From Octopus sinensis (lineage: Eukaryota): a DNA stretch of 64,000 bases. Made by a program: the position numbers and the translations under genes. The notes beneath the pieces are model-generated. The model ran no database searches, had not been told where the DNA came from, and was given only the letters and a program-made list of their open reading frames with translations. Position 1 is the first letter of the stretch. Each line of letters begins with the position of its first letter. The DNA lies in NCBI RefSeq assembly GCF_006345805.1, contig NC_043018.1, forward strand, positions 28,520,001-28,584,000, in the 5' to 3' direction. Below, in pieces: positions 1 through 63,585 of this stretch.

Positions 1-233
1 GTTGAAAGTAAAGGAATTTTGTTAAAATCTTCGTTCGACTCCATTCTTTCATATGAACACACACGTGTGTATATATATATTATATATGTGTACGTAAATA
101 TGTGTGTGTGCATGTATGTAAGTATGCGTATATGTATGTATTTAACTTTCTTTTTATGTATATATCCCTCTCTCTCTGTATGTATATCTATGTGTGTGTA
201 TGTATATATATATATATATATATACATATACAC

Positions 234-980: not shown

Positions 981-1014
<34 letters not shown>

Positions 1015-1237
1015 ATCAATATAGGGTGGCAAAAAATTTCGTAGAATTTATTTGCCACCAGCGGCCTAGTGGGAAAAAATTAAATAGTCATAGACCATTT
1101 ATAAGTTCAACATCACAATCAAGGAATGGCCATAATAGGCCATTCACCCACTAGAAATAACAGCCAAAGCTTCAACCGCAAAATAACAATAATTCCGCAA
1201 ACCAGGAGAAAATTAAAAAAAAACATTTACCCTGTAA

Positions 1238-1342
1238 TTTCTTATACGATGCACCGTTTCATCTATTGTTTAATGGTAAACTAACCTGATTAAATTAAAT
1301 CAAGCCAATCTTCCATAGGCCGATAGATTCGTCAGTAAGTAA
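1238..1342 (-). ncRNA. Type I hammerhead ribozyme (inverted copy, subfamily A)
   Basis: Minus strand: ttactta-CTGACGA-atctat...atagat-GAAA-cggtgcatcg-TA/taagaaa, with one mismatch in stem I. Confidence 0.8.
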
Positions 1343-1519
1343 CAGCCAGATCCGAGCAGATATTATCACGAGGCACCTCTATCCCTGCCTCGGCAATATC
1401 TGACCTAAAATTTTCAAATCATCGCACTCGCGCCAAATTTATCGGCAGCAAATATAAGCCGCCGATTCCCGAGGCAGGGATAGAGGTGCCTCGTGATAAT
1501 ATCTGCTCGGATCTGGCTG

Positions 1520-1624
1520 TTTCTTACTGACGAATCTATCGGCCTATGGAAGATTGGCTTGATTTAATTTAATCAGGTTAGTTTACCATTAAACAATAGA
1601 TGAAACGGTGCATCGTATAAGAAA
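1520..1624 (+). ncRNA. Type I hammerhead ribozyme, unit 1
   Basis: Stem I tttctta (1520-26)/taagaaa (1618-24); core CTGACGA 1527-33; stem II atctat/atagat (1534-39/1596-1601) enclosing 56 nt; GAAA 1602-05; stem III cggtgcatcg; predicted GUA cleavage after 1617. Confidence 0.9.
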
Positions 1625-2004
1625 TTACAGGGTAAATGTTTTTTTTAATTTTCTCCTGGTTTCCGGAATTAATGATATTTTGCGGTTGAAGCTTTGGCTG
1701 TTATTTCTAGTGGGTGAATGGCCTATTATGGCCATTCCTTGATTGTGATGTTGAACTTATAAATGGTCTATGACTATTTAATTTTTTCCCACTAGGCCGC
1801 TGGTGGCAAATAAATTCTAGGAAATTTTTTGCCACCCTATATTGATTAATTATGAATTTTCTGGTTAATTCCGTAATGGAATCGGCGGCTTATATTTGCT
1901 GCCGATAAATTTGGCGCGAGTGCGATGATTTGAAAATTTTAGGTCAGATATTGCCGAGGCAGGGATAGAGGTGCCTCGTGATAATATCTGCTCGGATCTG
2001 GCTG

Positions 2005-2109
2005 TTTCTTACTGACGAATCTATCGGCCTATGGAAGATTGGCTTGATTTAATTTAATCAGGTTAGTTTACCATTAAACAATAGATGAAACGGTGCATCG
2101 TATAAGAAA
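2005..2109 (+). ncRNA. Type I hammerhead ribozyme, unit 2
   Basis: Same motif as 1520-1624, shifted by 485 bp. Confidence 0.9.
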
Positions 2110-2488
2110 TTACAGGGTAAATGTTTTTTTTTAATTTTCTCCTGGTTTGCGGAATTAATGTTATTTTGCGGTTGAAGCTTTGGCTGTTATTTCTAGTGGG
2201 TGAATGGCCTATTATGGCCATTCCTTGATTGTGATGTTGAACTTATAAATGGTCTATGACTATTTAATTTTTTCCCACTAGGCCGCTGGTGGCAAATAAT
2301 TCTACGAAATTTTTTGCCACCCTATATTGATTAATTATGAATTTTCTGGTTAATTCCGTAATGGAATCGGCGGCTTATATTGCTGCCGATAAATTTGGCG
2401 CGAGTGCGATGATTTGAAAATTTTAGGTCAGATATTGCCGAGGCAGGGATAGAGGTGCCTCGTGATAATATCTGCTCGGATCTGGCTG

Positions 2489-2593
2489 TTTCTTACTGAC
2501 GAATCTATCGGCCTATGGAAGATTGGCTTGATTTAATTTAATCAGGTTAGTTTACCATTAAACAATAGATGAAACGGTGCACCGTATAAGAAA
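2489..2593 (+). ncRNA. Type I hammerhead ribozyme, unit 3
   Basis: Same motif; stem III is the perfect palindrome cggtgcaccg. Confidence 0.9.
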
Positions 2594-2858
2594 TTACAGG
2601 GTAAATGTTTTTTTTAATTTTCTCCTGGTTTGCGGAATTAATGTTATTTTGCGGTTGAAGCTTTGGCTGTTATTTCTAGTGGGTGAATGGCCTATTATGG
2701 CCATTCCTTGATTGTGATGATATATATATATATATGTAGGAAATAGTAAGAAGTGAAAAAACTACAGAAGGCTTGTTTTAAAAGGTTAAAAAATATATAT
2801 TTGAGTCAATATGTCTGAAGAATATTATAAATTTTTTTCTTACAATGACATAGTTTAG

Positions 2859-2898
2859 AAGAAATGACCGGTTTCGCGTTTAGCTTTTCAAATTTCTT
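2859..2898 (-). ncRNA. Decayed minimal type I hammerhead in the PLE 3' region
   Basis: Minus strand: aagaaat-TTGAAAA-gc taaac gc-GAAA-ccgg-TC/atttctt. Stem I is a perfect 7 bp; the core differs from CTGAAGA by two transitions. Confidence 0.7.
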
Positions 2899-3007
2899 AC
2901 ATCGTTATGTTTATGTTGAGAAGAGTTATCGTTATGTTTATGTTGAAAAGAGTTCTAGATAAGGGGAGGTAATAAGTGATTTCTTCCGGTGTAAGGGAGA
3001 TAATCGC

Positions 3008-5290
3008 TTAAAATTGTTTGCCTTTCCTTTGGGGTGAATTTCTCTGTATAAGTATGTTGGAATGGTTAAGTCTGGGCTTGTACTTATCAATGAAGAATGT
3101 TTCCTTGTTTAGTCTAATTTGTGTTGGTGTTCCGATAGCACATTGGTAAAATGGAAAGATTAAAAATTGTGGTAGTAGTTGCTTTGCGCATTTCTCAATG
3201 TGCTCACTAATAGGTATCATTCTGTATTCTGGGAATGCAATCTGTTGTCAATGCAGTGTGCATCTACGTCTGAGTGATAGTCCCGTGGATCCCACGTAGT
3301 CTTGGTGGCAGCCCGAGCATTTTATGACATAAATTATGTTTTCAGAGGCACAAGTAAAATTAAATTTGATCTTGAATTTCTGTCCCTCTTTGAAGAGGAA
3401 TTCTGATCCTTCTAGCAGGTTTGGACATGTTGCACAGTTCGATCTACCACATTTTTTTACTTTTGCATCCGTAATTTCAGAAAACAATTTTGCCTTTGTG
3501 AGAATCTTTTTAAGTGATTTAGGCTGTTTGTAGCTTTTAATGATTTGGTGTATGTTTAGAATTTCCTTTAATTTTGGGTTTTTATGAAGTATTGGTAAAT
3601 TCTGGGTGATGATGGTGAAGGCTTCTTTGTTTCTGGGGTTGTATGTGGATATGTAAGGTAGTATTTTCGGGGAAGGTGTGTTGTTGTCTTGAACTTTTCT
3701 TAAAGTTTCTATGTTGATTTCTGTTGCACGTCTGATCCCATCCTCTATGAGTTGAGCTGGGTAATGTCTGTCAATTAGGGTGTTTTTGAGTTCTTGCAGT
3801 CTAAAGTTCCTGGTATTTTGTTCTGACACTATTGTGCATATCCTTCTTGCAAGGTTGAAGGGGGAGTTTGTTTTAGTGTGTCTTGGGTGGCATGAATTAA
3901 AAAGAAGGTATTGTTTGGCGTCTGTGGCTTTGTAAAAAAAATGTCTGTTTCTATTTTAAGGTTAATTTTTTTAATTAGTCTATCCAAGAATGGGAGCTCC
4001 TTTTAGTTGTATTCCATTGTGAACTGTATATTTGGGTTTATGCTGTTCAATAGGTTTTTAAATTTTAGGAGTTTATCTGTGTTTTCATTGCAGAGTATAA
4101 AACAATCGTCCAGGAATCGTTTCCAATTCTCTTTTATGTATTGAGAGAGGGGGTTTCCAAAGATTGATAAAGATTCCTGGTAAATGATTATTTCCAGGTA
4201 GCCCATTGTTAGGTTTGCAATGACTGGTGCTGCCCTTGTACCCATGGCAATTCCAGATTTTTGACGGTAAAATGTATTGTCAAACATGAAGTGGTTATTA
4301 TGAAGGATAAATTCAATTGATTTAGTAATGAATTCTTTACTGATCCGTTTTGGTATTTCTTCCGGAAATTGGTCCAGCCAGAACTGTATTGCCTCCAGTC
4401 CATAATTATGAGGTATACTGGTATATAAGTTAACTACATCAAATGAAACCATGATTGTTTCTTCCTTGGCTTTTTTTGGAAGGTGGTTTAACACATCTAA
4501 GTCATCTCTGATATGGCTATCGATATGTTTAAGGAAGGGTTTCAGGAGGATGTCCATAAATAGACTTAGTCTGTGTGTTTCACAGGTTGGGCCAGCTACA
4601 ATGGGTCGTAGTTTTAGGTCCCCCGGGTTAGGTGTGTGTATGTATGTCTTTGGTGATTTTTTAATGGTTTCATTTATAATTTGGCTTTTATGAATTTTTG
4701 GCAGACCATAGAAAAGGCTAGGTTTGCATTTAAAGTTTGTTAGAAAGTCAATCTCTTTGGTTGTCAGTTCCTTTCCATGGGTTTTAATTAGTGAGGACAG
4801 AGTTTTCATTATTTTTTGCGGGGTGTAGTTGGTAATTTTTTCATAATATTGGTTGTCATCAAGCAAGGAAATTACAAGATTTCTATAGTATGATGTATCC
4901 ATTATTACAACTGCATTTCCCTTATCTGCTTCCTTAATGGTTATATCTTCATCATTTTGAAGTTCTATCAGTTCCTTCCATTGTGTAGTGTTAAAATTTG
5001 AGTTAACTTTCTGTTTATGTATAGTATGGTAGGGAAAGTTCTCAATGTGGTTGCAGAATTCGTCAAGATCTTTATTTCTTCCTCTGTGGGGGATGTGTTC
5101 ACTTTTGTTCTTGACTAGTGATTCATCTTCAGTATTGAAACTGGTTGATGCTTCTGCTAGTCTTAATGTTCTGCAAAATTCTGTTATATTATCCTTGAAT
5201 TCATTTAGGTTGGCTCTGCGTGGAGTTGGTGTAAATTTGAGCCCTTTTGAGAGGATGTCAATTTTTATGTTAGAAAGAGGTTTGGTTTAA
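3008..5290 (-). pseudogene. PLE reverse transcriptase + GIY-YIG endonuclease, broken by stops/frameshifts
   Basis: ORF pieces 4003-4902 (RT), 3248-3829 (thumb/linker/GIY-YIG start) and 3008-3220 (GIY-YIG end) are collinear. There is a stop after IQFTMEYN and frame changes near 3.9 and 3.24 kb. Confidence 0.9.
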
Positions 5291-6479
5291 AGATTGATTA
5301 TCTTCGGTTTTTCCTTTTACTAGGTTCCAGCCTGTGTCCTGGTGTCTCTGATCCCTGGCTAAAAAATGTTGGGTGTAATTTTGTTTGTATGAGTTGTCTG
5401 TGAGGTTGTGTGATATTGGGTCGGGGGAATGGTGGTATTGTTGCCCCCGATTGTTGTGTGTGTGGGAATCTATGGTTGTTTTTGTTTGTGGTGTGTGTAA
5501 ACTTTCTGTATGTGAAATATTTTGGTTTCGAACTGCTTGTATGTGGGATGTTGCTTGACATAGTGTTTTTTTGCGTTTGTCTTGTGTTCAGTGGGGACCA
5601 GTAATTTTGGTTCATGGGGTAGTAGCGACTTGTGTGTGGTGTATTTCTTACTCTAGTGTCGTTTTGTGCTGTATGGTGATTGGGTGTGGTATTAGGATAT
5701 TGTTGGTGTGTTCTGTTTTTGGTGTAATTTATTTCATAGACGCGTTGTCTGTCAGCTTGTTCCCTGTTAAGTCTTGCGTGGTTTGAAAATGTTGGTTGTG
5801 GGTGATTTCTGTTTCTAGTGTATGGAGGATAGTTGGGGGTTGTTCGTGGGTTGTTTGGTTTTTCTTTTTTATTTTTTGTAATTTTCTTAAGGAAGGGATT
5901 ATTTGTATCCAATTCATTTTTGAAAGTTAAACTATATCTTTGGAAGAAATCGTTGCTTTTTTCCCAGCGCAGGAGAGAATTTCTCTCTTCTTTTTCACAG
6001 GTATCCTTCCAATGATCTAATGTATTTTCAAGGGGTTGTCCCTCGGTATGTTTTTGTATTATATTGTGTATCTCCTCGTCGATGCTTTTAAATTTTTCCT
6101 CAAGTAAATAAATATAGTTGAACGCAGATGTTATAAAAATTCTTTTACTTTCGACATATGTTTCGAAGACAACATTGGTTGGTAAACATGTGTTTCGGTT
6201 TCAGTTGCACTGCGCAGCATCTTCTGTTATAACCCCCGGGCCGTCCAAAGCTTGGTGAATAAATTTGGTGGACAGAAACTGCGTGGAAGCCCCTGTATGT
6301 GTGTGTGTATATGTGCCTTACTATTTGTATTTGAACCCACCTCCACAATTAACAGATATTCGTTTGTTTATGATCACGTAACCTGGCGCATCGGCAAAAT
6401 AGATCTATTAATTATGTACCAGAAGTTTAAACCAAAAATTTTTAAAAATACATATTGGGGACGGTTTGTTTGATTAATT

Positions 6480-6785
6480 CCCTCAAGGCGGTACCCCAGC
6501 ATGGCCGCTGCCCAACAACTGAAGTGAATGAAACATAAAACATGGTGACACAACAGAATAATTATCAATCATGATTCATTCTATAAAACACTTGAGGTTA
6601 GTGCTACAGCATGACCGCAGCCCTACGACTGAAATGAGTGAAACATAAAACATGAAGACAAATCAGAATACGTATTAATCATGATTTATTCCTTAAAATT
6701 CTTGAGGTGGGTGCCCCAGCATGACCGCAGTTCAGCGACTGAAAAGTGTAAAGCACAAGAAAAAACATGAAAACAGAGTAAGTAA
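6480..6785 (+). repeat. Three degenerate 110-bp tandem units containing the CORE-SINE 3' tail
   Basis: cagcatg(g/a)ccgc at 6497, 6607 and 6717. Confidence 0.7.
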
Positions 6786-6789
6786 TAAT

Positions 6790-7210
6790 ACTCTTTACTC
6801 TTTTACTTGTTTCAGTCATTTGACTGCGGCCATGCTGGAGCACCGCCTTTAGTCGAGCAAATGAACCCCGGGACTTATTCTTTGTAAGCCCAGTACTTAT
6901 TCTATCGGTCTCTTTTGCCGAACCGCTAAGTTACGGGGACGTAAACACACCAGCATCGGTTGTCAAGCAATGCTAGGGGGACAAACACAGACACACAAAC
7001 ACACACACACATACACATATATATATATATATATATACATATATACGACAGGCTTCTTTCAGTTTCCGTCTACCAAATCCAATCACAAGGCATTGGTCGG
7101 CCCGGAGCTATAGTAGAAGACACTTTCCCAAGATGCCACGCAGTGGGACTGAACCCGGGACGATGTGGTTAATTAGCAAGCCACTTACCACACAGCCACT
7201 TCTGCTCCTA
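6790..7210 (-). mobile_element. tRNA-derived CORE-type SINE (family A), full length
   Basis: tRNA-like head, a CORE-like segment (ggcatcttgggaaagtgtcttctactatagc) resembling the MIR core, an internal microsatellite and an (aaagagt)n tail. There are many homologous copies in the window. Confidence 0.85.
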
Positions 7211-15158: not shown

Positions 15159-15998
15159 TTTATATATAAAAGAAAGGTTGTGTGTCTGTCTACTCCGATT
15201 TAGATTCCTAACTACTCCCACATTTTGCGATGCAGTTTAACCAAAACCGGGTATCTTATAGTCGTGATTCATATCGAGCCCTTCTGGGTATTAGCGCGCG
15301 TCTACGATGAGTCTATGATTTTACAAATAATTTACCATCATTTTTTCCATTTTAATGCATATTTTTTAAAATAAACGGAAGTAACTCTCAAACTTCACAC
15401 CAATATGCGTGCTCATATGCGACGTAATATCACATCAGCAGCATTTTCTCACACCCTCCTTGCACTTGGCGAAGGCCAAATACCAGGGGATGAAAATGGT
15501 AATATTGCCATCGATTCCATTTGTACCATTGTTAAGACGCCTTCTGATCTCAGAGATGCAGTGTTCCCAGATCTACAAGCTAATTATCAGAATATGGATT
15601 GGATTGGCAAAAAGGCTATACTGGCCCCGAGGAATAAAACTGTTCACCATATTAATGATGAAATGCTAAAACTCATTCCTGGGGAAGTCTATGTATATCA
15701 GTCTGTCGATACAACTCCTGACCCGAGGACGTCATCAACTATCCAATAGAGGTACTCAATTCCTTTGAGCACCCCGGACTACCACCACACTTTCTCAAAC
15801 TTAAAGTTGGTGCCCCTATAATGCTCATCAGAAATTTGGTTCCCCAAAACATTCAATGGCACACGTTTGATCGTTAAGTCCTTATCTCCCCCGTAAGCTT
15901 ATATCAATATTTGCCTGAATAATCATCATAATTCAGTGCAATCATTAACAGTACTTTCAAGCAATTCAGCCCCGAGCAACGCCGGGCAATTCTGCTAG
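15159..15998 (+). mobile_element. Internally deleted Helitron with a PIF1-like helicase fragment
   Basis: Helicase motifs (AILAPRNKTV..IN, VDT, GLPPH.LKLKVGAPIMLIRNL, NGTRLIV) at 15405-15895; 3' hairpin cccg-agcaacgc-cggg followed by CTAG (15995-98) and T; AT-rich 5' end t(t)tatatataaaag. Confidence 0.85.
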
Positions 15999-16040
<42 letters not shown>

Positions 16041-16042
<2 letters not shown>

Positions 16043-16758
16043 CAAATTGAGGAACGGCTATAATAGGCCGTTCGACCCACTAGAAAAGCAGCCAGGGCTT
16101 CAAACGCAATAGTAGTAATTCCGAAGCCCTGGCTGCTTTTTCTAGTGGGTCGAACGGCCTATTATAGCCGTTCCTCAATTTGTTGTTGAATTTATTAATA
16201 GTCTCTGACTATTTCCTTTTTCTCACTAGACCGCTGGTGGCACAATAATTTCTATTGAATTTTTTGCTACCCTAATATTGATTAATTGATAATTTTGTGA
16301 TTAATTCCGAAATTGAATCGGCAGCTTATATTTGCTGCCGATAAATTGGCGCGAGTACGTTGATTTTGAAAATTTTAGGTCAGATATTGCCGAGGCATTA
16401 AGGCAGCTGCTTCGTGTAATTTCTCTCCCTCCTGTCTCCTTTACTGATGAATTGCGTTGGCCTTTGGAAGATTGACTTGATTTAATTTAATCAGGCTGGT
16501 TTACCATTAAAAAACACTGAAACAATGCATTGTCTAAAGATGAACAGGGTAAATGTTTTTCAATTTTTCCTCTGTTTCCGGAATTACTACTATTTGCGGT
16601 TGAAGCCCTGCTGCTTTTTCTAGTCGGTCGAACGGCCTATTATAGCCGTTCCTCAATTTGTTGTTGAATTTATTAATAATCTCTGACTATTTCCTTTTTC
16701 TCACTAGACCGCTGGTGGCAAAATAGTTTCTATTGAATTTTTTGCTACCCTAATATTG

Positions 16759-16761
<3 letters not shown>
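16041..16761. mobile_element. Retrozyme-like array, subfamily B: 83-bp inverted 5' piece plus ~1.3 units on the plus strand
   Basis: Homologous to 1011-2719; inversion junction at 16123/16124; (TA)n on both sides. Confidence 0.85.
16439..16539 (+). ncRNA. Type I hammerhead ribozyme, subfamily B
   Basis: cttta-CTGATGA-...-GAAA(16519-22)-caatgcattg (perfect palindrome)-TC/taaag; predicted GUC cleavage after 16534. The base of stem II is weak. Confidence 0.75.
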
Positions 16762-16800
<39 letters not shown>

Positions 16801-16804
<4 letters not shown>

Positions 16805-17556
16805 CAATAATAGGGTAGCAAAAAATTCAGAATTTATTTGCCACCAGCGGCCTAGTGGGGAAAAGGAAATAGTCAGAGACTGTTAATAAATCAACAGCAA
16901 AATTAAGGAACGGCCATAATAGGCCGTTCAACCCACTAGAAATAGCAGCCAAGGCTTCAACCGCAAAAAAGTATTAATTCCGTAAACAAGGAGAAAATTT
17001 TAAAAAAAAACATTTACCCTGTTATACTTTATACAATGCATCGTTTCATCAATTTTTTAATGGTAAATCAGCCTGATTAAATTAAATCAAGCTAATCTTC
17101 CATAAGCCAACAGATTCATCAGTAAAGTAGGCCAGACGGGAGAGATATTTTCACGAGGCAGCACCACTACTGCCTCAACTATATCTAACCTAAAAATTTT
17201 CAAATCATCGTACTCGCGCCAAATTTATGGGCAGCAAATATAAGCTGCCGATTCCATTTCGGAATTAAACAGAAAATTCATAATTAATCAATATAGGGTA
17301 GCAAAAAATTCAGAAATTATTTGCCACCAGCGGTCTAGTGGGAAAAAGGAAATAGTCAGAGACTATTAATAAATTCAACAGCAGAATTAAGAAACGGCCA
17401 TAATAGGCCGTTCAACCCACTAGAAATAGCAGCCAAGGCTTCAACCGCAAAAAAGTATTAATTCCGTAAGCCAGGAGAAAATTTAGAAAAAAAATTTACC
17501 CTGTTATACTTTATACAATGCATCGTTTCATCTATTTTTTAATGGTAAATCAGCCT
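16801..17556 (-). mobile_element. Retrozyme-like array, subfamily C: ~1.6 units, sense on the minus strand
   Basis: agggtagcaaaaaatt at 16812 and 17295 (period 483); homologous to subfamilies A and B; (TA)n flanks. Confidence 0.85.
17025..17129 (-). ncRNA. Type I hammerhead ribozyme, subfamily C
   Basis: Minus strand: tacttta-CTGATGA-atc...gat-GAAA-cgatgcattg-TA/taaagta, with a 7-bp stem I. Confidence 0.85.
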
Positions 17557-19194
17557 AATATATATATATATCCTCTTCCACGTAAGTTTTATCTTAATAA
17601 TTATGATGCGCAATCTTAACCTTACTGTCTCTATTTTTCTAACATTGCTGCCCCCTCTCGCTCATTCTTCATTTTTTCTGGTTTTCTCTACCATTCTCTC
17701 CCTTTCACCGTTCCCTTTCTCTTACTCCTCCTCCACATTCTCCTCCCTCTCGTCACTGCCCCCCTCTCTCTCATTCTTCATTCTTTCTGTTTTTGTCTAC
17801 CATTCTCTCCCATTCACCGTTCCCTTTCTCTTACTACTCCTCCTCCTCCTCCTCCTCCCTCTCGTTGCTGACATGTGAGCAGAGTCCTGTCTTTCTGACC
17901 ACACCCTTCAACGAGTATAGACGGCATCCTATCCCTTTCTTATGTCGTTGTTGTCACGCGTTCAAAATAATTTTTCTTTCGTTCGGCTTAACGTCCATAT
18001 TACTGTTATTCTACTTGACCTGTCGTTTACTGTTTTTATTTTTATTCGTACTTTTACTGTCTTGTATTCTTTTTACAGTCCTGTTTTTGTTACCACTTTT
18101 ACCCCTCCGCAAAAAATCTCAAATTTTATTTAATTTGATTTGCGGGAAGGACCGTTTCACCAAAGTCGTGTCTCGCCTTTACCTTCGAAACGCGGAGTAG
18201 ACGAAACAGAGGAGGCTGAAGAAGGGGAATTTTCCTTGTGTTGTATGTCCTGTACCCTGTTTTTTCGTTGTTTTAAAAAATGTCCGTTTCCATGTTCTGT
18301 TTTTATGTTTTCGTTTCTCATTGTGTTCGGCGTTTTTTTGGTGTCCTGTACCTATATATGGATGTATATATACATATAGATGTAGGTCGGTACATATATG
18401 TATGTATATATGCATATGTTTCATTTATTATTTTGTTATATATATATTAAATGGCGGAATCAAGCGATGAAGGAAGAAGTAAAGATACAGAAAGAGAGAG
18501 AAAGAGAGAAAGAAAGAAAGAAGAAAGAAAGAAAGAAAGAGAGAAAGAAAGAAAGAAAGAGAGAAAGAAAGAAAGAAAGAAAGAAAGATCGTGTTCATGG
18601 GAATTAAAATTAATAAAAATATTCATACGTGTGTATTTCATATCATAACAGGATTGTTGTTGAATAAGAAAACAGTAAAGAACCAGCTGTTTCTTTTACG
18701 TTATTCGTCTCTCTAATTCCCCCAGAGACTTTTTAGACCTCTGCATCTGTTACTACACTTAATGACAGAAAACAGTCCTCTATCATTACGTATGTTTACT
18801 AATTATGCTCGTTAATTACATCTCAAATATTAATTCCGGTAATAATTCAACCACAAAATTAAGTATTCCATAAAGAAAAAAAAAACATTGTAAAAATCAT
18901 TAAAATATATTTTCTGTTTTTTTTAATTTTTATTTTGTTTCTTTTGTTCTTAATGCTCTTCGTGATAATGGTCGACAGACGAAAGTTTCTGACACAATTT
19001 GGTGAATTTCTATTCGATAAATAGTTGGTTCGTATCATGTTAAAAGTAGCTATTATTTGTTGTCGATGAAAGAAATATGCATTTTCTCTCGTGGAAATTA
19101 AGGCTATTTGAAGTTAAATCCAGGAATAATTTGAAAGAAATTTTTTGTAATGTGCGTGAATAGATAAGTAAGATGCTGGTTTTTTACGTATGTT

Positions 19195-20165
19195 TGAACG
19201 AGTGTCTGTGCTTGAGTGTTGTGTGTGTGTGGAGTGTGTTTCTTTACTTGAGTGGTGCGTGTCCGTGATTGAGTGTCTGTATGCGTTTCAGTGCGTGTCC
19301 TTGCTTGAGTGTCTTTGAATGTTTGAGTGCGTGTCCGTGTTTGACTGTCCGTGTGTGTTTGAGTGTGTGTTCGAGCTTGAGCATCCGTGTGTGTTTGAGT
19401 GTGTGTTCGTGGCTGAGTGTCAGTGAGTGTTTGAATGCGTGTCCGTACTTGAGTGTCTGTGTGTGTTGAGTGCGTGTTCTTACTTCAGTGTCTGTGTGCG
19501 TTTGAGTGTGTGTTCGTGCTTGCATGTTCGTATGTGTTTGAGCGTGTTGAGTCCGTATGCGCGCTTGTGTATTTGTGTCTGGTTGCGTGCGAGTCTCTAC
19601 TTGAGTGTCTGTGTGTCTTTGAGTGCGTGTCTGTGCTTGAGTCTCAGTGTGTGTTTGAGAGCGTGTTCCTGCGTGAGTGTCAGTGTGTGTTTGAGTGCGG
19701 GTCCGTGCTTGAATGTCTGTGTGAGTTTGAGTGCATGTTCGTGCTCGAGTGCCTGTGTGTGTTTGAGTGTCTGTGTACCTTTGAGTGCATGCTCGCGCTC
19801 GAGTGTATGTGTGTGTTTGAGTGTCTGTGTGCCTTTGAGTGCCTGTTCGCGCTCGAGTGTCTGTGTGTGTTTGAGTGCGTGTTCGTGCTTGAGTGTCTGT
19901 GTGCGTTTAATTGCATGTTCGTGATCGAGTGTCACTGTGTGATTCAGTGCGTGTTGTGCTTGAGTATTGGTGTGCGTTTGAGTGTGTTCGTGTTGCATGT
20001 GTATGTGTGTGTGTGCGTGTTGAGTGCGTGTGCGCGCTTGTGTATTTTTGTCGGGTTGTGTGCGTGTCACTATTTGAGTGTCAGTGTGCTTTGAGTGTGT
20101 GTCCGTGCTTGTGTGTCTGTGTGTGTTATTGAGTGCGTGTCCATGCTTGAGTGTCTATATGCGTT
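19195..20165. repeat. Degenerate ~36-bp GT-rich minisatellite
   Basis: Repeats of about gtgtgtttgagtgcgtgttcgtgcttgagtgtct, which generate spurious 12-aa periodic ORFs. Confidence 0.85.
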
Positions 20166-53204: not shown

Positions 53205-53580
53205 TCCAGATATTTTGTCTGTCGTTACGTTTTGAGTTCAAATTCCGCTGAGGTCGACTTTAACTTTCATTCATTCGGGGTCGATTAAATTAAGTACCAG
53301 TTACGCACTGGGGTCGATATAATCAACTTAGTCCGTTTGTCTGTCCTTGTTTCTCCTCTCTGTGTGTAGCCCCTTGTGGGCAGTAAAGAAATAGGTATTT
53401 CGTCTGCCGTTACGTTCTGAGTTCAAATTCCGTCGAGGTCGACTTTGGCTTCCATCCTTTTGGGGTCGATAAAATAAGTACCAGTTACGCAATGGGGTCG
53501 ATGCAATTGTCTTAATCCCATTGTCTGTTCTTGTCTGTCCCCTCTATGTTTAGTCCTCTGTGAGCAATAGAGAAATACAT
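53205..53580 (+). mobile_element. SINE family B dimeric 184-bp units
   Basis: Junction aaagaaataggtatttcgtc near 53390. Confidence 0.8.
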
Positions 53581-54791
53581 ATTTCGTTTTTTGACGTCTA
53601 TTTTTAGCATAAAAGGGATCCATATAGTGATCTCTCATATTGTTTATGTTTAATATAATTCTTGGTCCTCTATACACATGACTGTAAAAGAACATTTTAA
53701 ATATTTTTAACGTTCAGTAACAAAAAATATCCGTTAGTAAAGAGCTACCAGTACAACTTGAATATCTCGTCTACCAGCAATTTCCGTGAAGGCGCAGGGA
53801 CCTAGTGGTTTGGGCATTTTATCCACAATCATAAGATCGTACTTTCTATTACGTACCGGATCATTCATTGCGTTCTCGGGCAAAACTCTTCTTTCCATGT
53901 TGCTCTAGTCCAGTCCACTCAGCGACTGGCCGGCATCCTGTTCAATGGGGAATTTTGTGATCTCAACATGGAAAACCGTGAAACAAGCTCTGTCGGTTTT
54001 AGGGCCCGAGAGAGCAATGTCAAGAAGATTATAAACATATTCGTAATTTACCGATTTCAAAGTCAGTATCTGCTTGATTTGAACACAGAACCTAGAAATT
54101 CCGGGCTCTAAAACGTTCTAAAATATAAAATTTATCACAGAGATTTCTTAAAGAATGAAAAACAGAATCCAACCCTATTAGATCCCCCAAACATCTCTCG
54201 GAGTTTATGCCAATTTAAAATCTTCACTTTTCTTAATAATACAGAAAAAAAATATTACGTCCTGCAATATTTCACTTCATTGCAAGAGAATTCAACAATT
54301 TAAACAGAGATACTTGAAGAAATGTTATGATCGGTGCCAATCACTTTAATTGTTGTCACTCGTTTTACGTTTAAACTTCTATAAATCTATTTTTTTAATA
54401 CCATTTCGAAATCCACTTTTCTATATCTCCTCCTGTTTATTTCTTTCTAGAATATTCTCAATATACTTGTTTCATAAGTGCGTATTTCATGACTGAAGTT
54501 ATCAAATCGATTTTAAAACTATTCTTTCTTCTTCTATATATATAGTTTTTTCTTTTCCAAAATATGATGCAAAGCAAAATATCGTGTTTAATACAGTTGA
54601 TTTTTCTTCAATGATCAACTATCGAAATCACCATATCAAGATAATTCTGTTTCGTTTTGTTTTGCTTTCTCTTTTTTTAACGTATTATATCAAAATAATT
54701 ATTCAGCAACATTCCAATATTTTTATCATCCAAATATATATATATATATATAATATAATGTGTGTGTGTGTGTGTGCGTGCGTGCGTGTGC

Positions 54792-58134: not shown

Positions 58135-58560
58135 TAGTAAGGTCGATTAAATAAGTACCAGTTACGCACTGGGGTCGATATAATCGGCTTAATCCGTTTG
58201 ACCTCTCTCTGTTTAGCCCCTTGTTGGTAGTAAAGAAATAGGTATTTTGTCTGCCGCTACATTCTGAGTTCAAATTCCGCCGAGGTCGACTTGGCCTTTC
58301 ATCCTTTCGGGGTCGATTAGATAAGTACCAGTTACGCACTGGGTGGATATAATCGACTTAATCCAGTTGTTTGTCCCTTCTGTATTTAGCCCCTTGTGGG
58401 TAGTAAAGAAATAGGTATTTCGTCTGCCGCTACGTTCTGAGTTCAAATTTCGCCGAAGTCGACTCAGCCTTTCGTCTTTTCGTCAAACACTGGGATTGAT
58501 GTAATCGACTAGTCCCCTCCTCCAAAAGGTCAAACCTTGTGCCTTTAGTAGAAAGGAGTA
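58135..58560 (+). mobile_element. SINE family B multimer
   Basis: Two aaagaaataggtattt junctions (~58240 and ~58415). Confidence 0.8.
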
Positions 58561-60954: not shown

Positions 60955-61715
60955 AAGCAGTGAGCTGGCAGAATCGTTAGCACGCCGGGTGAAATGCGTA
61001 GCCGTATTTCGTCTGGCGTTACGTTCTGAGTTCAAATTCCGCCGTGGTCGACTTTGCCTTTCATCCTTTCGGAGTCGATAAATTAAGTACCAGTCACGCA
61101 CTGAGGTCGATGTAATCGACTCAAATCGTTTGCTTGTCCTTGTTTGTCCTCTCTGTGTTTAGCCCCTTGTGGGTAGTAAAGAAATAGGTATTTCGTCTGC
61201 GATTACGTTCTGATTTAAAATTTCGCCGAGGTCGACTTTGCCTTTCATCCTTTTGTGGTCGATAAATTATGTACCAGTTACGCGCTGGGATGGATGTAAT
61301 CGAATTAATCCGTTTGTCTGTCCTTGTTTGTTCCCTCTGTGTTTAGCCCCTTGTGGGTAGTAAAGAAATTGGTATTTCGTCTGGCGCTACGTTCTGAGTT
61401 CAAATTCCTCCGAGGTTGACTTTGCTTTTCATCCTTTCGTGGTCGATTAAATAAGTACCAGCTACGCACTGGGGTCGATGTCATCGACTTAATACGTTTG
61501 TCTGTCCTTGTTTGTCCTCTCTGTGTTCAGCCCCTTGTGGGTAGTAAAGAAATAGGTATTTCGTCCGTCTGACGTTACATTCTGAGTTCAAATTCCACCA
61601 AGTTGACTTTGCTTTCCATCCTTTCGGGGTCGATTAAATAAGTACCAGTTACCCACTGGAGTTGATCTAATCGCCTCCCCACCACACAATTTCAGACTTT
61701 GTGCCTATAGTAATT
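60955..61715 (+). mobile_element. SINE family B with ~3.6 internal tandem 184-bp units
   Basis: gtatttcgtc at 61004, 61188, 61372 and 61556; one head and one terminal tail. Confidence 0.88.
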
Positions 61716-63372: not shown

Positions 63373-63585
63373 TCAAAATTTGACCGCGTGTGTACCGTTG
63401 GCGATTTCTTTCCTTCGTCTTTCCTTCCTTGGATCTTTCCTTTTCCTATGTTTCTGACGAAGAGCTCCGCTCGAAACATTAAACCCTCCTTCTTTCCTTA
63501 TTTCCTGAGCGTCCAATAATACTATACTCGTTCCACGTCCTCGCGTTGTTGTGTTTTCTCTTTGTATTTTCATGTTTGGATTAAC
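63372..63585 (+). mobile_element. Solo pLTR-like element in (TA)n carrying a minimal hammerhead
   Basis: A ~210-bp pyrimidine-rich block between TA tracts with an HHR motif inside. Confidence 0.6.
63450..63484 (+). ncRNA. Minimal type I hammerhead (extra-A core variant)
   Basis: gttt-CTGACGA-a-gagc tcc gctc-GAAA-ca-tt/aaac. Stem III would be the palindrome aacgtt if the A at 63478 is a CpG-decayed G. Confidence 0.65.

What the first reader, a model, noticed from the sequence alone, without database searches (positions are those of the whole stretch)
1470..2719. ~485-bp 'satellite' is a retrozyme-like array: each monomer encodes a complete type I hammerhead ribozyme
Seen: each unit has a 7-bp stem I (tttctta/taagaaa), an exact CUGACGA core, a 6-bp stem II base (atctat/atagat) closing a 56-nt insert that itself folds back (atgg/ccat, tgatt/aatca), GAAA, a self-complementary stem III (cggtgca(t/c)cg) and a GUA cleavage site. 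Established: tandem HHR monomers with short palindromic helix III characterise animal non-LTR retrozymes and PLE pseudo-LTRs, whose multimeric transcripts self-cleave to monomers, often via dimeric folds, and circularise. Inference: transcripts would give ~485-nt monomers or circRNAs. That is long for an animal retrozyme as far as I recall, and the stem II is unusually extended. I know of no description of this family but cannot search to confirm novelty.
Basis: partly seen in the sequence, partly recalled or inferred. Interest (0 to 1): 0.93.

Follow-up and report, generated by a model that had tools for sequence, protein, structure and literature searches.

The report
Hammerhead-ribozyme tandem repeat in an octopod genome
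A 485-bp repeat in what looks like an octopus-type genome carries a plausible self-cleaving hammerhead ribozyme in every unit, so it is a new but fairly ordinary member of the known animal "retrozyme" class, inserted into (TA)n tracts the way Penelope-like retrotransposons insert.

Summary
A 485-bp repeat (1465-2719, 2.6 units, 98% alike) has a type I hammerhead in every unit: CUGACGA, GAAA, A15.1-U16.1, GUA cleavage site and three helices. An inverted 0.95-unit copy lies head-to-head at 1008-1469. A diverged locus (77-82% identity) lies at 16050-17549. A decayed Neptune-like Penelope element abuts the array (~2737-5950, minus strand). Across the three lineages all 11 fixed core bases are invariant. 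Only N7 and H17, the two free positions, vary. Helices I and III keep pairing through double changes. All six repeat ends lie within 9 nt of (TA)n. The architecture (tandem units, an inverted 5'-truncated partner, a microsatellite target) matches Penelope-type integration.

Caveats: Rfam's hammerhead models do not match. The 10.1-11.1 pair is A-U rather than G-C. Helix II is 68 nt. An alternative rod-like fold is equally conserved. Only five distinct sequences were available. Cleavage and circular RNA are untested.

The 485-bp size is not unusual: pDo500 is ~500 bp and vertebrate families span 51-972 bp. Verdict: a new member of the non-LTR retrozyme kind, of moderate interest.

The parts
1465..2719 (+). 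Head-to-tail array of the 485-bp unit (2.6 units). The unit junction ...TTTTAGGTCAGAT|ATTGCCGAGG is the same in every unit.
   Evidence: TRF period 485, 98% matches; BLAST of the monomer against the window; alignment
1008..1469 (-). Inverted, 5'-truncated 0.95-unit copy. It joins the + array head-to-head at ~1465-1469, and its 3' end abuts (AT)n.
   Evidence: Inverted repeats I1-I6, 98-100% complementary; BLAST
1519..1625 (+). Hammerhead 1: stem I 1519-1526/1618-1625, CUGACGA 1527-1533, helix II 1534-1601 (68 nt), GAAA 1602-1605, helix III to U1616, cleavage after A1617
2004..2110 (+). Hammerhead 2 (identical to 1), cleavage after 2102
2488..2594 (+). Hammerhead 3 (helix III CGGUGCACCG, a perfect palindrome), cleavage after 2586
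1237..1343 (-). Hammerhead 4, in the inverted copy. It has one stem I mismatch (T>A). Cleavage after 1245 on the minus strand.
984..1011 (.). (AT)n tract at the left end of locus 1
2720..2736 (.). (TA)n tract between the array's right end and the 3' end of the Penelope-like element
16050..16762 (+). Second locus, unit A. A 74-nt inverted arm (16123->16050, minus) joins head-to-head to a + array at 16123-16762 (1.3 units). Hammerhead d1 is at 16439-16539: CUGAUGA at 16444, GUC site with cleavage after 16534, and a damaged helix II base.
16803..17549 (-). Second locus, unit B: minus-strand array of 1.5 units. Hammerhead d2 is at 17129->17025 (CUGAUGA at 17122, cleavage after 17032). The 3' half of another hammerhead lies at the truncated 5' end (~17549->17505).
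15999..16041 (.). (TA)n flanking unit A on the left
16761..16801 (.). (TA)n between units A and B. The 3' ends of both point into it.
17558..17571 (.). (TA)n at the right (5') end of unit B
2737..5950 (-). Decayed Neptune-like Penelope element. RT and GIY-YIG reading frames run 5262->3010 with one in-frame stop, a frameshift and a stop inside the endonuclease. The CX5CXXC linker is CGRSNCATC. The 3' end abuts the same (TA)n. The 5' limit is uncertain. This is context and a candidate class of mobilising enzyme, not the parent of the repeat.
2859..2898 (-). Remnant of the Penelope element's own small hammerhead: aagaaat UUGAAAA gcuaaacgc GAAA ccggu C|auuucuu, where C3 and G8 are mutated
   Evidence: relative L002 3010-3048: cgcuaa CUGACGA ... 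GAAA ccggu U|uuagcg

Best explanation
This is a non-autonomous retroelement of the animal non-LTR retrozyme kind, in an octopod-like genome. Shown: a 485-bp non-coding unit is arranged head-to-tail with one constant junction, so the unit behaves as a closed circle or multimer. Each unit carries a type I hammerhead on the + strand. Inferred mechanism: the array is transcribed into a multimer. Helix III is too weak alone (0 to -3.9 kcal/mol), but its palindrome lets two hammerheads pair into a 12-bp extended helix III (-16.5 to -24.7 kcal/mol). Cleavage after GUA (GUC in one copy) would then release 485-nt monomers with 5'-OH and 2',3'-cyclic phosphate ends held together by stem I. A host RtcB-type ligase would close them into circles. 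In the circle the hammerhead would be held in a conserved alternative rod-like pairing. A Penelope-type RT/GIY-YIG endonuclease would nick a (TA)n tract and copy the circular or multimeric RNA by target-primed reverse transcription. That would give tandem units with variable 5' truncation, and template switching would give a head-to-head inverted partner.
For: Motif: all core bases and three helices are in the type I order in five complete copies; the sixth, d1, keeps the core but has a damaged helix II base. The strict descriptor gave 0 hits in 100 shuffles. Conservation: three lineages are only 77-82% identical overall, yet C3 U4 G5 A6 G8 A9 G12 A13 A14 A15.1 U16.1 are all invariant. With ~72% of columns invariant, the chance of that is 0.72^11, about 0.03. 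The only two variable core columns are N7 (C/U) and H17 (A/C), the two positions allowed to vary (1 in 78 if placed at random among 13 positions). Covariation: 94% of cells are paired, against 25-42% when partners are slid. Seven pairs changed on both sides: 4 in stem I, 2 in helix III, 1 in helix II. Strand: 5 of the 14 pairs in the helix II extension are G.U, which cannot form on the other strand. Energetics: the hammerhead fold lies within 2-6 kcal/mol of the MFE in five of six copies, and the helix III dimer is far more stable than the hairpin. Retro-insertion: the unit junction is constant in both loci. All six ends lie <=9 nt from a pure (TA)>=5 run, while only 6.8% of window positions lie within 12 nt of one. 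Head-to-head inverted 5'-truncated copies occur at two of three insertion units. This is the Penelope insertion architecture and (TA)n bias described in PMC8557442. A Neptune-like element with the CX5CXXC linker sits in the same (TA)n. The class features match PMC7229834.
Against: No Rfam hammerhead model matches at gathering or at E<=10, even on 131 nt. The 10.1-11.1 pair is A-U in all copies, whereas G-C is the most conserved pair after 15.1-16.1 (PMC3088659, PMC4209133). The 68-nt helix II departs from the usual 4-bp helix II, and no loop1-loop2 contact could be identified. RNAalifold prefers an alternative pairing of the core with the helix III strands, and that pairing is 95-100% kept, so covariation does not single out the hammerhead junction. 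Only 5 distinct sequences, from 3 lineages, were available. The hammerhead is not more conserved than several other blocks of the unit. No copy was found in ~170 kb of Octopus and Argonauta DNA. No parent element sharing sequence with the unit was found. Transcription, cleavage, circles and mobilisation are all untested.
Confidence: 0.72

Rival explanations
1. The repeat is an inert satellite or dead repeat. The hammerhead is a relic or never worked (A10.1-U11.1, over-long helix II). The arrays grew by unequal crossing-over or replication slippage at fragile (TA)n tracts, not by reverse transcription.
For: Rfam does not recognise the motif. The 10.1-11.1 pair is non-canonical. Copy d1 has a broken helix II and c4 has a stem I mismatch. 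The hammerhead is no more conserved than other blocks. An unrelated (TA)n-centred palindrome at 50-468 shows that such tracts generate inverted structures on their own.
Against: Three independently diverged lineages keep every fixed core base and vary only at N7 and H17. Compensatory changes occur in stems I and III. Units A and B at locus 2 differ by ~20% yet sit in the same (TA)n, which suggests separate insertions rather than local amplification.
Confidence: 0.15
2. The units are not an independent non-autonomous family. They are terminal (pseudo-LTR) pieces of an unidentified autonomous Penelope-like element, inserted as extremely 5'-truncated tandem copies.
For: Penelope elements carry their hammerheads in pseudo-LTRs and insert as partial tandems with inverted copies (PMC8557442, PMC4209133). 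Xenopus retrozymes are sister to pseudo-LTRs (bioRxiv 10.64898/2026.07.22.740005).
Against: The unit shares no detectable sequence with the adjacent Penelope element or its relative L002. That family has a different, small hammerhead with helix III ACCGGU. Successive units join at one constant junction with exact 484-485 spacing, rather than each restarting at a variable truncation point.
Confidence: 0.1
3. The hammerhead boxes are a chance match inside a long imperfect hairpin.
For: The motif is simple, and chance matches occur in large databases (PMC3088659). The alternative rod-like fold explains much of the pairing. A chance CTGACGA...GAAAC hairpin exists at 63447-63483.
Against: There were 0 hits in 100 shuffles for the full descriptor. 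The core is conserved and variation is restricted to N7 and H17 in diverged copies. Tandem context and a palindromic helix III are what known animal hammerhead repeats show.
Confidence: 0.03

Closest known systems
Animal non-LTR retrozymes (Cervera & de la Pena 2020, PMC7229834: coral, mussel, axolotl)
   Same: Head-to-tail repeats of a few hundred bp, low GC (37%), no ORF, LTR, PBS or PPT, one type I hammerhead per unit, a highly self-paired monomer (z about -5), and co-occurrence with Penelope-like elements.
   Different: The unit is 485 bp against ~170-400 nt in that paper. Helix II is 68 nt rather than ~4 bp plus a loop. The 10.1-11.1 pair is A-U. No recognisable loop1-loop2 contact was found. 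No expression data exist. No cephalopod case was found in the searchable literature.
pDo500 satellite of Dolichopoda cave crickets (PMC2837043) and newt satellite 2
   Same: Each unit of a ~500-bp (pDo500) or ~330-bp (newt) tandem repeat contains a hammerhead. Double-hammerhead cleavage through helix III has been proposed for them. Compensatory changes occur in the stems, including at 10.1/11.1 in pDo500.
   Different: Those hammerheads are compact (49 nt) and were shown to cleave. Here the motif spans 107 nt and is untested.
Minimal or palindromic-helix-III hammerheads in Penelope-like element pseudo-LTRs (Cervera & de la Pena 2014, PMC4209133)
   Same: Type I topology and a palindromic helix III that suggests dimeric action. 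The insertion architecture is also Penelope-like: tandem plus inverted 5'-truncated copies and a (TA)n target (PMC8557442).
   Different: No RT/EN ORF lies between the units, and there is no sequence similarity to the neighbouring element. Helix III is longer (3 bp plus A15.1-U16.1 with a UGCA loop). The bulged base after A9 and the G10.1-C11.1 pair are both absent.
Rfam Hammerhead_1 (RF00163) and related hammerhead models
   Same: Core sequence and helix order.
   Different: No match at any threshold tried.

Membership tests
Hammerhead ribozyme, type I | Core C3 U4 G5 A6 N7 G8 A9 ... G12 A13 A14, in this order | tested here: met
   CUGACGA or CUGAUGA plus GAAA in all six complete copies
Hammerhead ribozyme, type I | A15.1-U16.1 pair followed by H17 (not G) at the cleavage site | tested here: met
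   A-U is invariant. H17 is A in five copies and C in d1.
Hammerhead ribozyme, type I | Three helices around the core, with helix I open-ended | tested here: met
   Stem I is 5-8 bp, helix II is a 6-bp base plus an 18-bp extension, and helix III is 4 bp. 94% of cells are paired, with 7 double changes. The fold lies within 2-6 kcal/mol of the MFE except in d1.
Hammerhead ribozyme, type I | G10.1-C11.1 closing pair of helix II | tested here: not met
   A-U in all copies (pair 20-88). Natural variation at this pair is known (PMC3088659, PMC2837043), but its effect here is unknown.
Hammerhead ribozyme, type I | Tertiary contact between helix I and helix II loops (canonical metazoan form: helix I 6 bp, helix II 4 bp) | tested here: inconclusive
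   Helix II has an internal loop after 6-7 bp where a contact could form, and the 3' flank ACAGGG is invariant. No contact could be demonstrated.
Hammerhead ribozyme, type I | Score at or above the gathering threshold of an Rfam hammerhead covariance model | tested here: not met
   No hammerhead hit at gathering, nor at E<=10 on 1.9 kb or on 131 nt
Hammerhead ribozyme, type I | Site-specific self-cleavage | not testable with these tools
   Needs in vitro transcription
Animal non-LTR retrozyme | Short head-to-tail repeats, each with a type I hammerhead | tested here: met
   Period 485, 2.6 units, plus two further arrays
Animal non-LTR retrozyme | Low GC, non-coding, no LTR/PBS/PPT | tested here: met
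   GC is 37%. The longest ORF within the array units is 52 aa; a 60-aa frame at 972-1154 spans the (AT)n flank and the end of the inverted copy. The 52-aa ORF has no relatives among 5.8 billion proteins.
Animal non-LTR retrozyme | Expressed as linear and circular monomer RNAs | not testable with these tools
   No transcriptome access
Animal non-LTR retrozyme | Coexists with autonomous Penelope-like elements | tested here: met
   A decayed RT plus GIY-YIG element is adjacent. Its best relatives are in Octopus and Argonauta.
Penelope-like element pseudo-LTR | The repeat flanks, and is continuous with, an RT-EN ORF of the same element | tested here: not met
   No similarity between the unit and the neighbouring element or L002. 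The units are contiguous.

The most novel reading that the evidence does not exclude
The conserved 68-nt helix II and the equally conserved alternative rod-like pairing make this a switchable hammerhead: active only as a dimer in nascent multimers, and locked in the circle. In addition, the insertion scars (a constant circular junction, two preferred 3' ends at unit positions ~285 and ~387, (TA)n targets, snap-back inverted partners) would be direct structural evidence that a Neptune-type Penelope RT/GIY-YIG enzyme copies retrozyme circles by rolling-circle target-primed reverse transcription. So far that step has been inferred mainly from co-occurrence and phylogeny.
Probability: 0.3. Interest if true: 0.6.

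Novelty: new member of a known kind. Interest (0 to 1): 0.4.

Why it matters
It would add cephalopods to the animals known to carry hammerhead retrozymes. It also shows that a family with a long helix II insert is invisible to Rfam models, and probably to descriptors with short loop limits, so current censuses may undercount such elements. The clean insertion architecture next to a Penelope element offers a small, testable case for how retrozymes are mobilised. It does not change the current picture of hammerheads or retrozymes.

Tried and rejected
- Rfam at gathering on the whole window, and at E<=10 on 1.9 kb and on 131 nt, gave no hammerhead hit. The only hits were spurious miRNA-type matches to the large inverted repeat.
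- Exact-pattern scans with the most conserved 20-30 nt of helix II found one chance 21-nt match in metagenome contigs (L001), none in viral contigs and none in prokaryotic genome contigs.
- I tried to reach other copies through spurious ORF calls. The 52-aa ORF is not on record and has no relative.
- I fetched ~170 kb around related Penelope genes in Octopus sinensis, O. bimaculoides and Argonauta hians (L003-L008) plus an ENA contig (L002). BLAST covered L002, L003 and L005. Pattern searches and covariance model R1 covered all loci. None found a copy, so the comparative evidence is limited to the window.
- The neighbouring Penelope element as parent of the repeat is rejected. It shares no sequence with the unit and has a different hammerhead.
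- CTGACGA...GAAAC at 63454-63477 is rejected as a hammerhead. It is a plain hairpin.
- Strand asymmetry of folding energy is not decisive. The z-scores are alike on both strands (-5.2 and -5.7).

Full report
**1. What is there**

TRF finds a single array at 1465-2719 with period 485, 2.6 copies and 98% matches.
- Stem I is gtttctta / taagaaat.
- CTGACGA starts at 1527, 2012 and 2496.
- A 6-bp helix II base (atctat/atagat) encloses 56 nt, so 68 nt separate the core from GAAA.
- Helix III is cggtgca(t/c)cg.
- The GUA site puts cleavage after 1617, 2102 and 2586.

I wrote a type I descriptor: CUGANGA, helix II of at least 3 bp, GAAA, a helix III closed by A15.1-U16.1, H17, and a stem I of at least 5 bp. 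It hits the three array copies and one further site. It gives 0 hits in 100 shuffles of the window on both strands. Relaxing stem I to 4 bp adds one more copy.

**2.

- The array is only part of the structure. A 0.95-unit copy lies inverted at 1008-1469, joined head-to-head to the + array at ~1465-1469 and 98-100% complementary to it. It carries a fourth hammerhead on the minus strand (1343->1237) with one stem I mismatch.
- A second, diverged locus lies at 16050-17549. It has two insertion units.
  - Unit A is a 74-nt inverted arm (16123->16050) joined head-to-head to a + array (16123-16762).
  - Unit B is a minus-strand array (17549->16803).
  - The three lineages (locus 1, A, B) are 77-82% identical.
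- Every outer end abuts a (TA)n tract: 984-1011, 2720-2736, 15999-16041, 16761-16801 and 17558-17571. All six ends are within 9 nt of a pure (TA)>=5 run. Only 6.8% of window positions lie within 12 nt of such a run.
- The 3' ends fall into two tight classes: unit position ~385 (three cases) and ~285 (two cases).
- The junction between successive units is the same in all arrays. The unit therefore has no fixed genomic termini and behaves like a circle or multimer.
- Immediately right of the (TA)n at 2720-2736 lies a decayed Penelope-like element on the minus strand.
  - RT (Pfam RVT_1) and GIY-YIG endonuclease frames run 5262->3010, with one in-frame stop, a frameshift and a stop inside the endonuclease.
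  - The endonuclease part, with a CX5CXXC linker (CGRSNCATC), aligns to residues 478-669 of a 731-aa relative at E = 5e-42.
  - The named hits with highest identity are from Octopus sinensis, O. bimaculoides and Argonauta hians (54-63% identity); bivalve proteins also rank near the top. The window is therefore probably octopod.
  - The linker places the element with the Neptune/Nematis type, for which (TA)n targeting has been proposed (PMC8557442).
  - The element has its own small hammerhead remnant at 2898->2859, with C3 and G8 mutated. A 74%-identical relative (L002) keeps cgcuaa-CUGACGA-...-GAAA-ccggu-U|uuagcg.
  - The 485-bp unit shares no sequence with this element.

**3. Is the hammerhead real?**

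Evidence for:
- All 11 fixed core bases are invariant in the three lineages. About 72% of columns overall are invariant, so the chance of this is about 0.03.
- The only variable core columns are N7 (C/U) and H17 (A/C), exactly the two free positions.
- With the hammerhead structure imposed, 94% of cells pair, against 25-42% when partners are slid by 1-3 columns.
- Seven pairs changed on both sides: four in stem I, two in helix III and one in helix II.
- The helix II extension is an 18-bp interrupted stem. Five of its 14 apical pairs are G.U, so it can form only in + strand RNA. Its changes are structure-preserving.
- The hammerhead fold is within 2-6 kcal/mol of the MFE in five of six copies.
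- Helix III alone is marginal (0 to -3.9 kcal/mol). Its palindrome gives a 12-bp intermolecular helix of -16.5 to -24.7 kcal/mol. This is the double-hammerhead logic known from newt, cricket and Penelope hammerheads (PMC4209133, PMC2837043).

Evidence against, or limiting:
- No Rfam hammerhead model matches at gathering or at E<=10, even when only 131 nt are searched.
- The 10.1-11.1 pair is A-U in every copy. G-C is the most conserved pair after 15.1-16.1 (PMC3088659, PMC4209133).
- Helix II is far longer than the usual 4 bp, and I could not identify a helix I-helix II contact.
- RNAalifold, run without my structure, keeps stem I and the helix II extension. However, it replaces the helix II base and helix III with a rod-like pairing of A6-A9 with the 3' strand of helix III, and of the helix II base with the 5' strand of helix III. 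That pairing is 95-100% kept in all copies.
- So the covariation, most of which sits in stem I, does not by itself choose the hammerhead junction. The alternative may be the inactive conformer of the monomer, but that is inference.
- Only five distinct sequences from three lineages were available.
- The hammerhead region is no more conserved than several other blocks of the unit.
- Copy d1 has a broken helix II and c4 a stem I mismatch. This is expected for individual genomic copies after insertion.

**4. How it most likely works**

Shown: the motif, its conservation, the array architecture, the (TA)n flanks and the neighbouring Penelope element.

Inferred:
- The array is transcribed into multimers.
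- Cleavage occurs mainly through dimeric hammerheads and gives 485-nt monomers.
- A host ligase circularises the monomers.
- A Penelope-type RT/endonuclease copies the circular or multimeric RNA at a nicked (TA)n.

Three features of the loci match how Penelope insertions are described (PMC8557442): tandem units with variable 5' truncation, an inverted 5'-truncated copy at the 5' end, and the microsatellite target. [quoted passage not shown]

**5. Comparison with what is known, and novelty**

- The class features of non-LTR retrozymes (PMC7229834) are met wherever they could be tested.
- The unit size is not remarkable. pDo500 is ~500 bp (PMC2837043), and vertebrate families range from 51 to 972 bp.
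- Full-text searches found no hammerhead repeat or retrozyme described for cephalopods. That library is incomplete, and Repbase and Dfam could not be consulted.
- I could not find further copies. Pattern scans of metagenome, viral and prokaryotic collections gave only one chance match. About 170 kb of octopod DNA contained none.

**6. Verdict**

This is a new member of a known kind, with an unusually long and conserved helix II and an A-U 10.1-11.1 pair as its distinguishing features. Interest is moderate.

Noticed in passing
window 2737-~5950 (minus strand): Decayed Neptune-like Penelope element. It has RT, a CX5CXXC linker and GIY-YIG, broken by one in-frame stop, a frameshift and a stop inside the endonuclease. 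It is inserted in the same (TA)n as the repeat. A small hammerhead remnant lies at 2898->2859 with C3 and G8 mutated. The relative L002 (3010-3048) keeps CUGACGA, but its helix II is irregular.
   Followed up: partly
window 50-212 and 306-468: A 163-nt inverted repeat, 93% complementary, centred on a long (TA)n tract (199-317). It is unrelated in sequence to the 485-bp unit.
   Followed up: no
window 53210-53587, 58141-58482, 61004-61673: SINE-like units of ~173-184 bp in short tandem arrays of 2-3.6 copies. ARAGORN finds no tRNA, Rfam has no match, and my descriptor finds no hammerhead.
   Followed up: partly
window 19255-20156: GT-rich 36-bp minisatellite of ~25 copies, 71% matches.
   Followed up: no
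window 63447-63483: The hairpin tgtttCTGACGAagagctccgctcGAAACa contains both hammerhead boxes but lacks the helix III and helix I arrangement. Judged a chance match.
   Followed up: yes
window 2000-2117 (alignment A1 columns 16-19/100-103 and 24-28/93-97): An alternative rod-like pairing sequesters A6-A9 and the helix III strands. It is kept in 95-100% of cells across all copies and may be an inactive conformer of the monomer.
   Followed up: partly
window 15405-15749 (+): A 114-aa ORF beside the second locus looks by eye like a PIF1/Helitron-type helicase fragment. It was not searched.
   Followed up: no
window 6497-6744: A 110-bp tandem duplication (2.3 copies, 81%) in a repeat-rich stretch upstream of the Penelope element. 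Its inverted partner is at 6794-6852.
   Followed up: no
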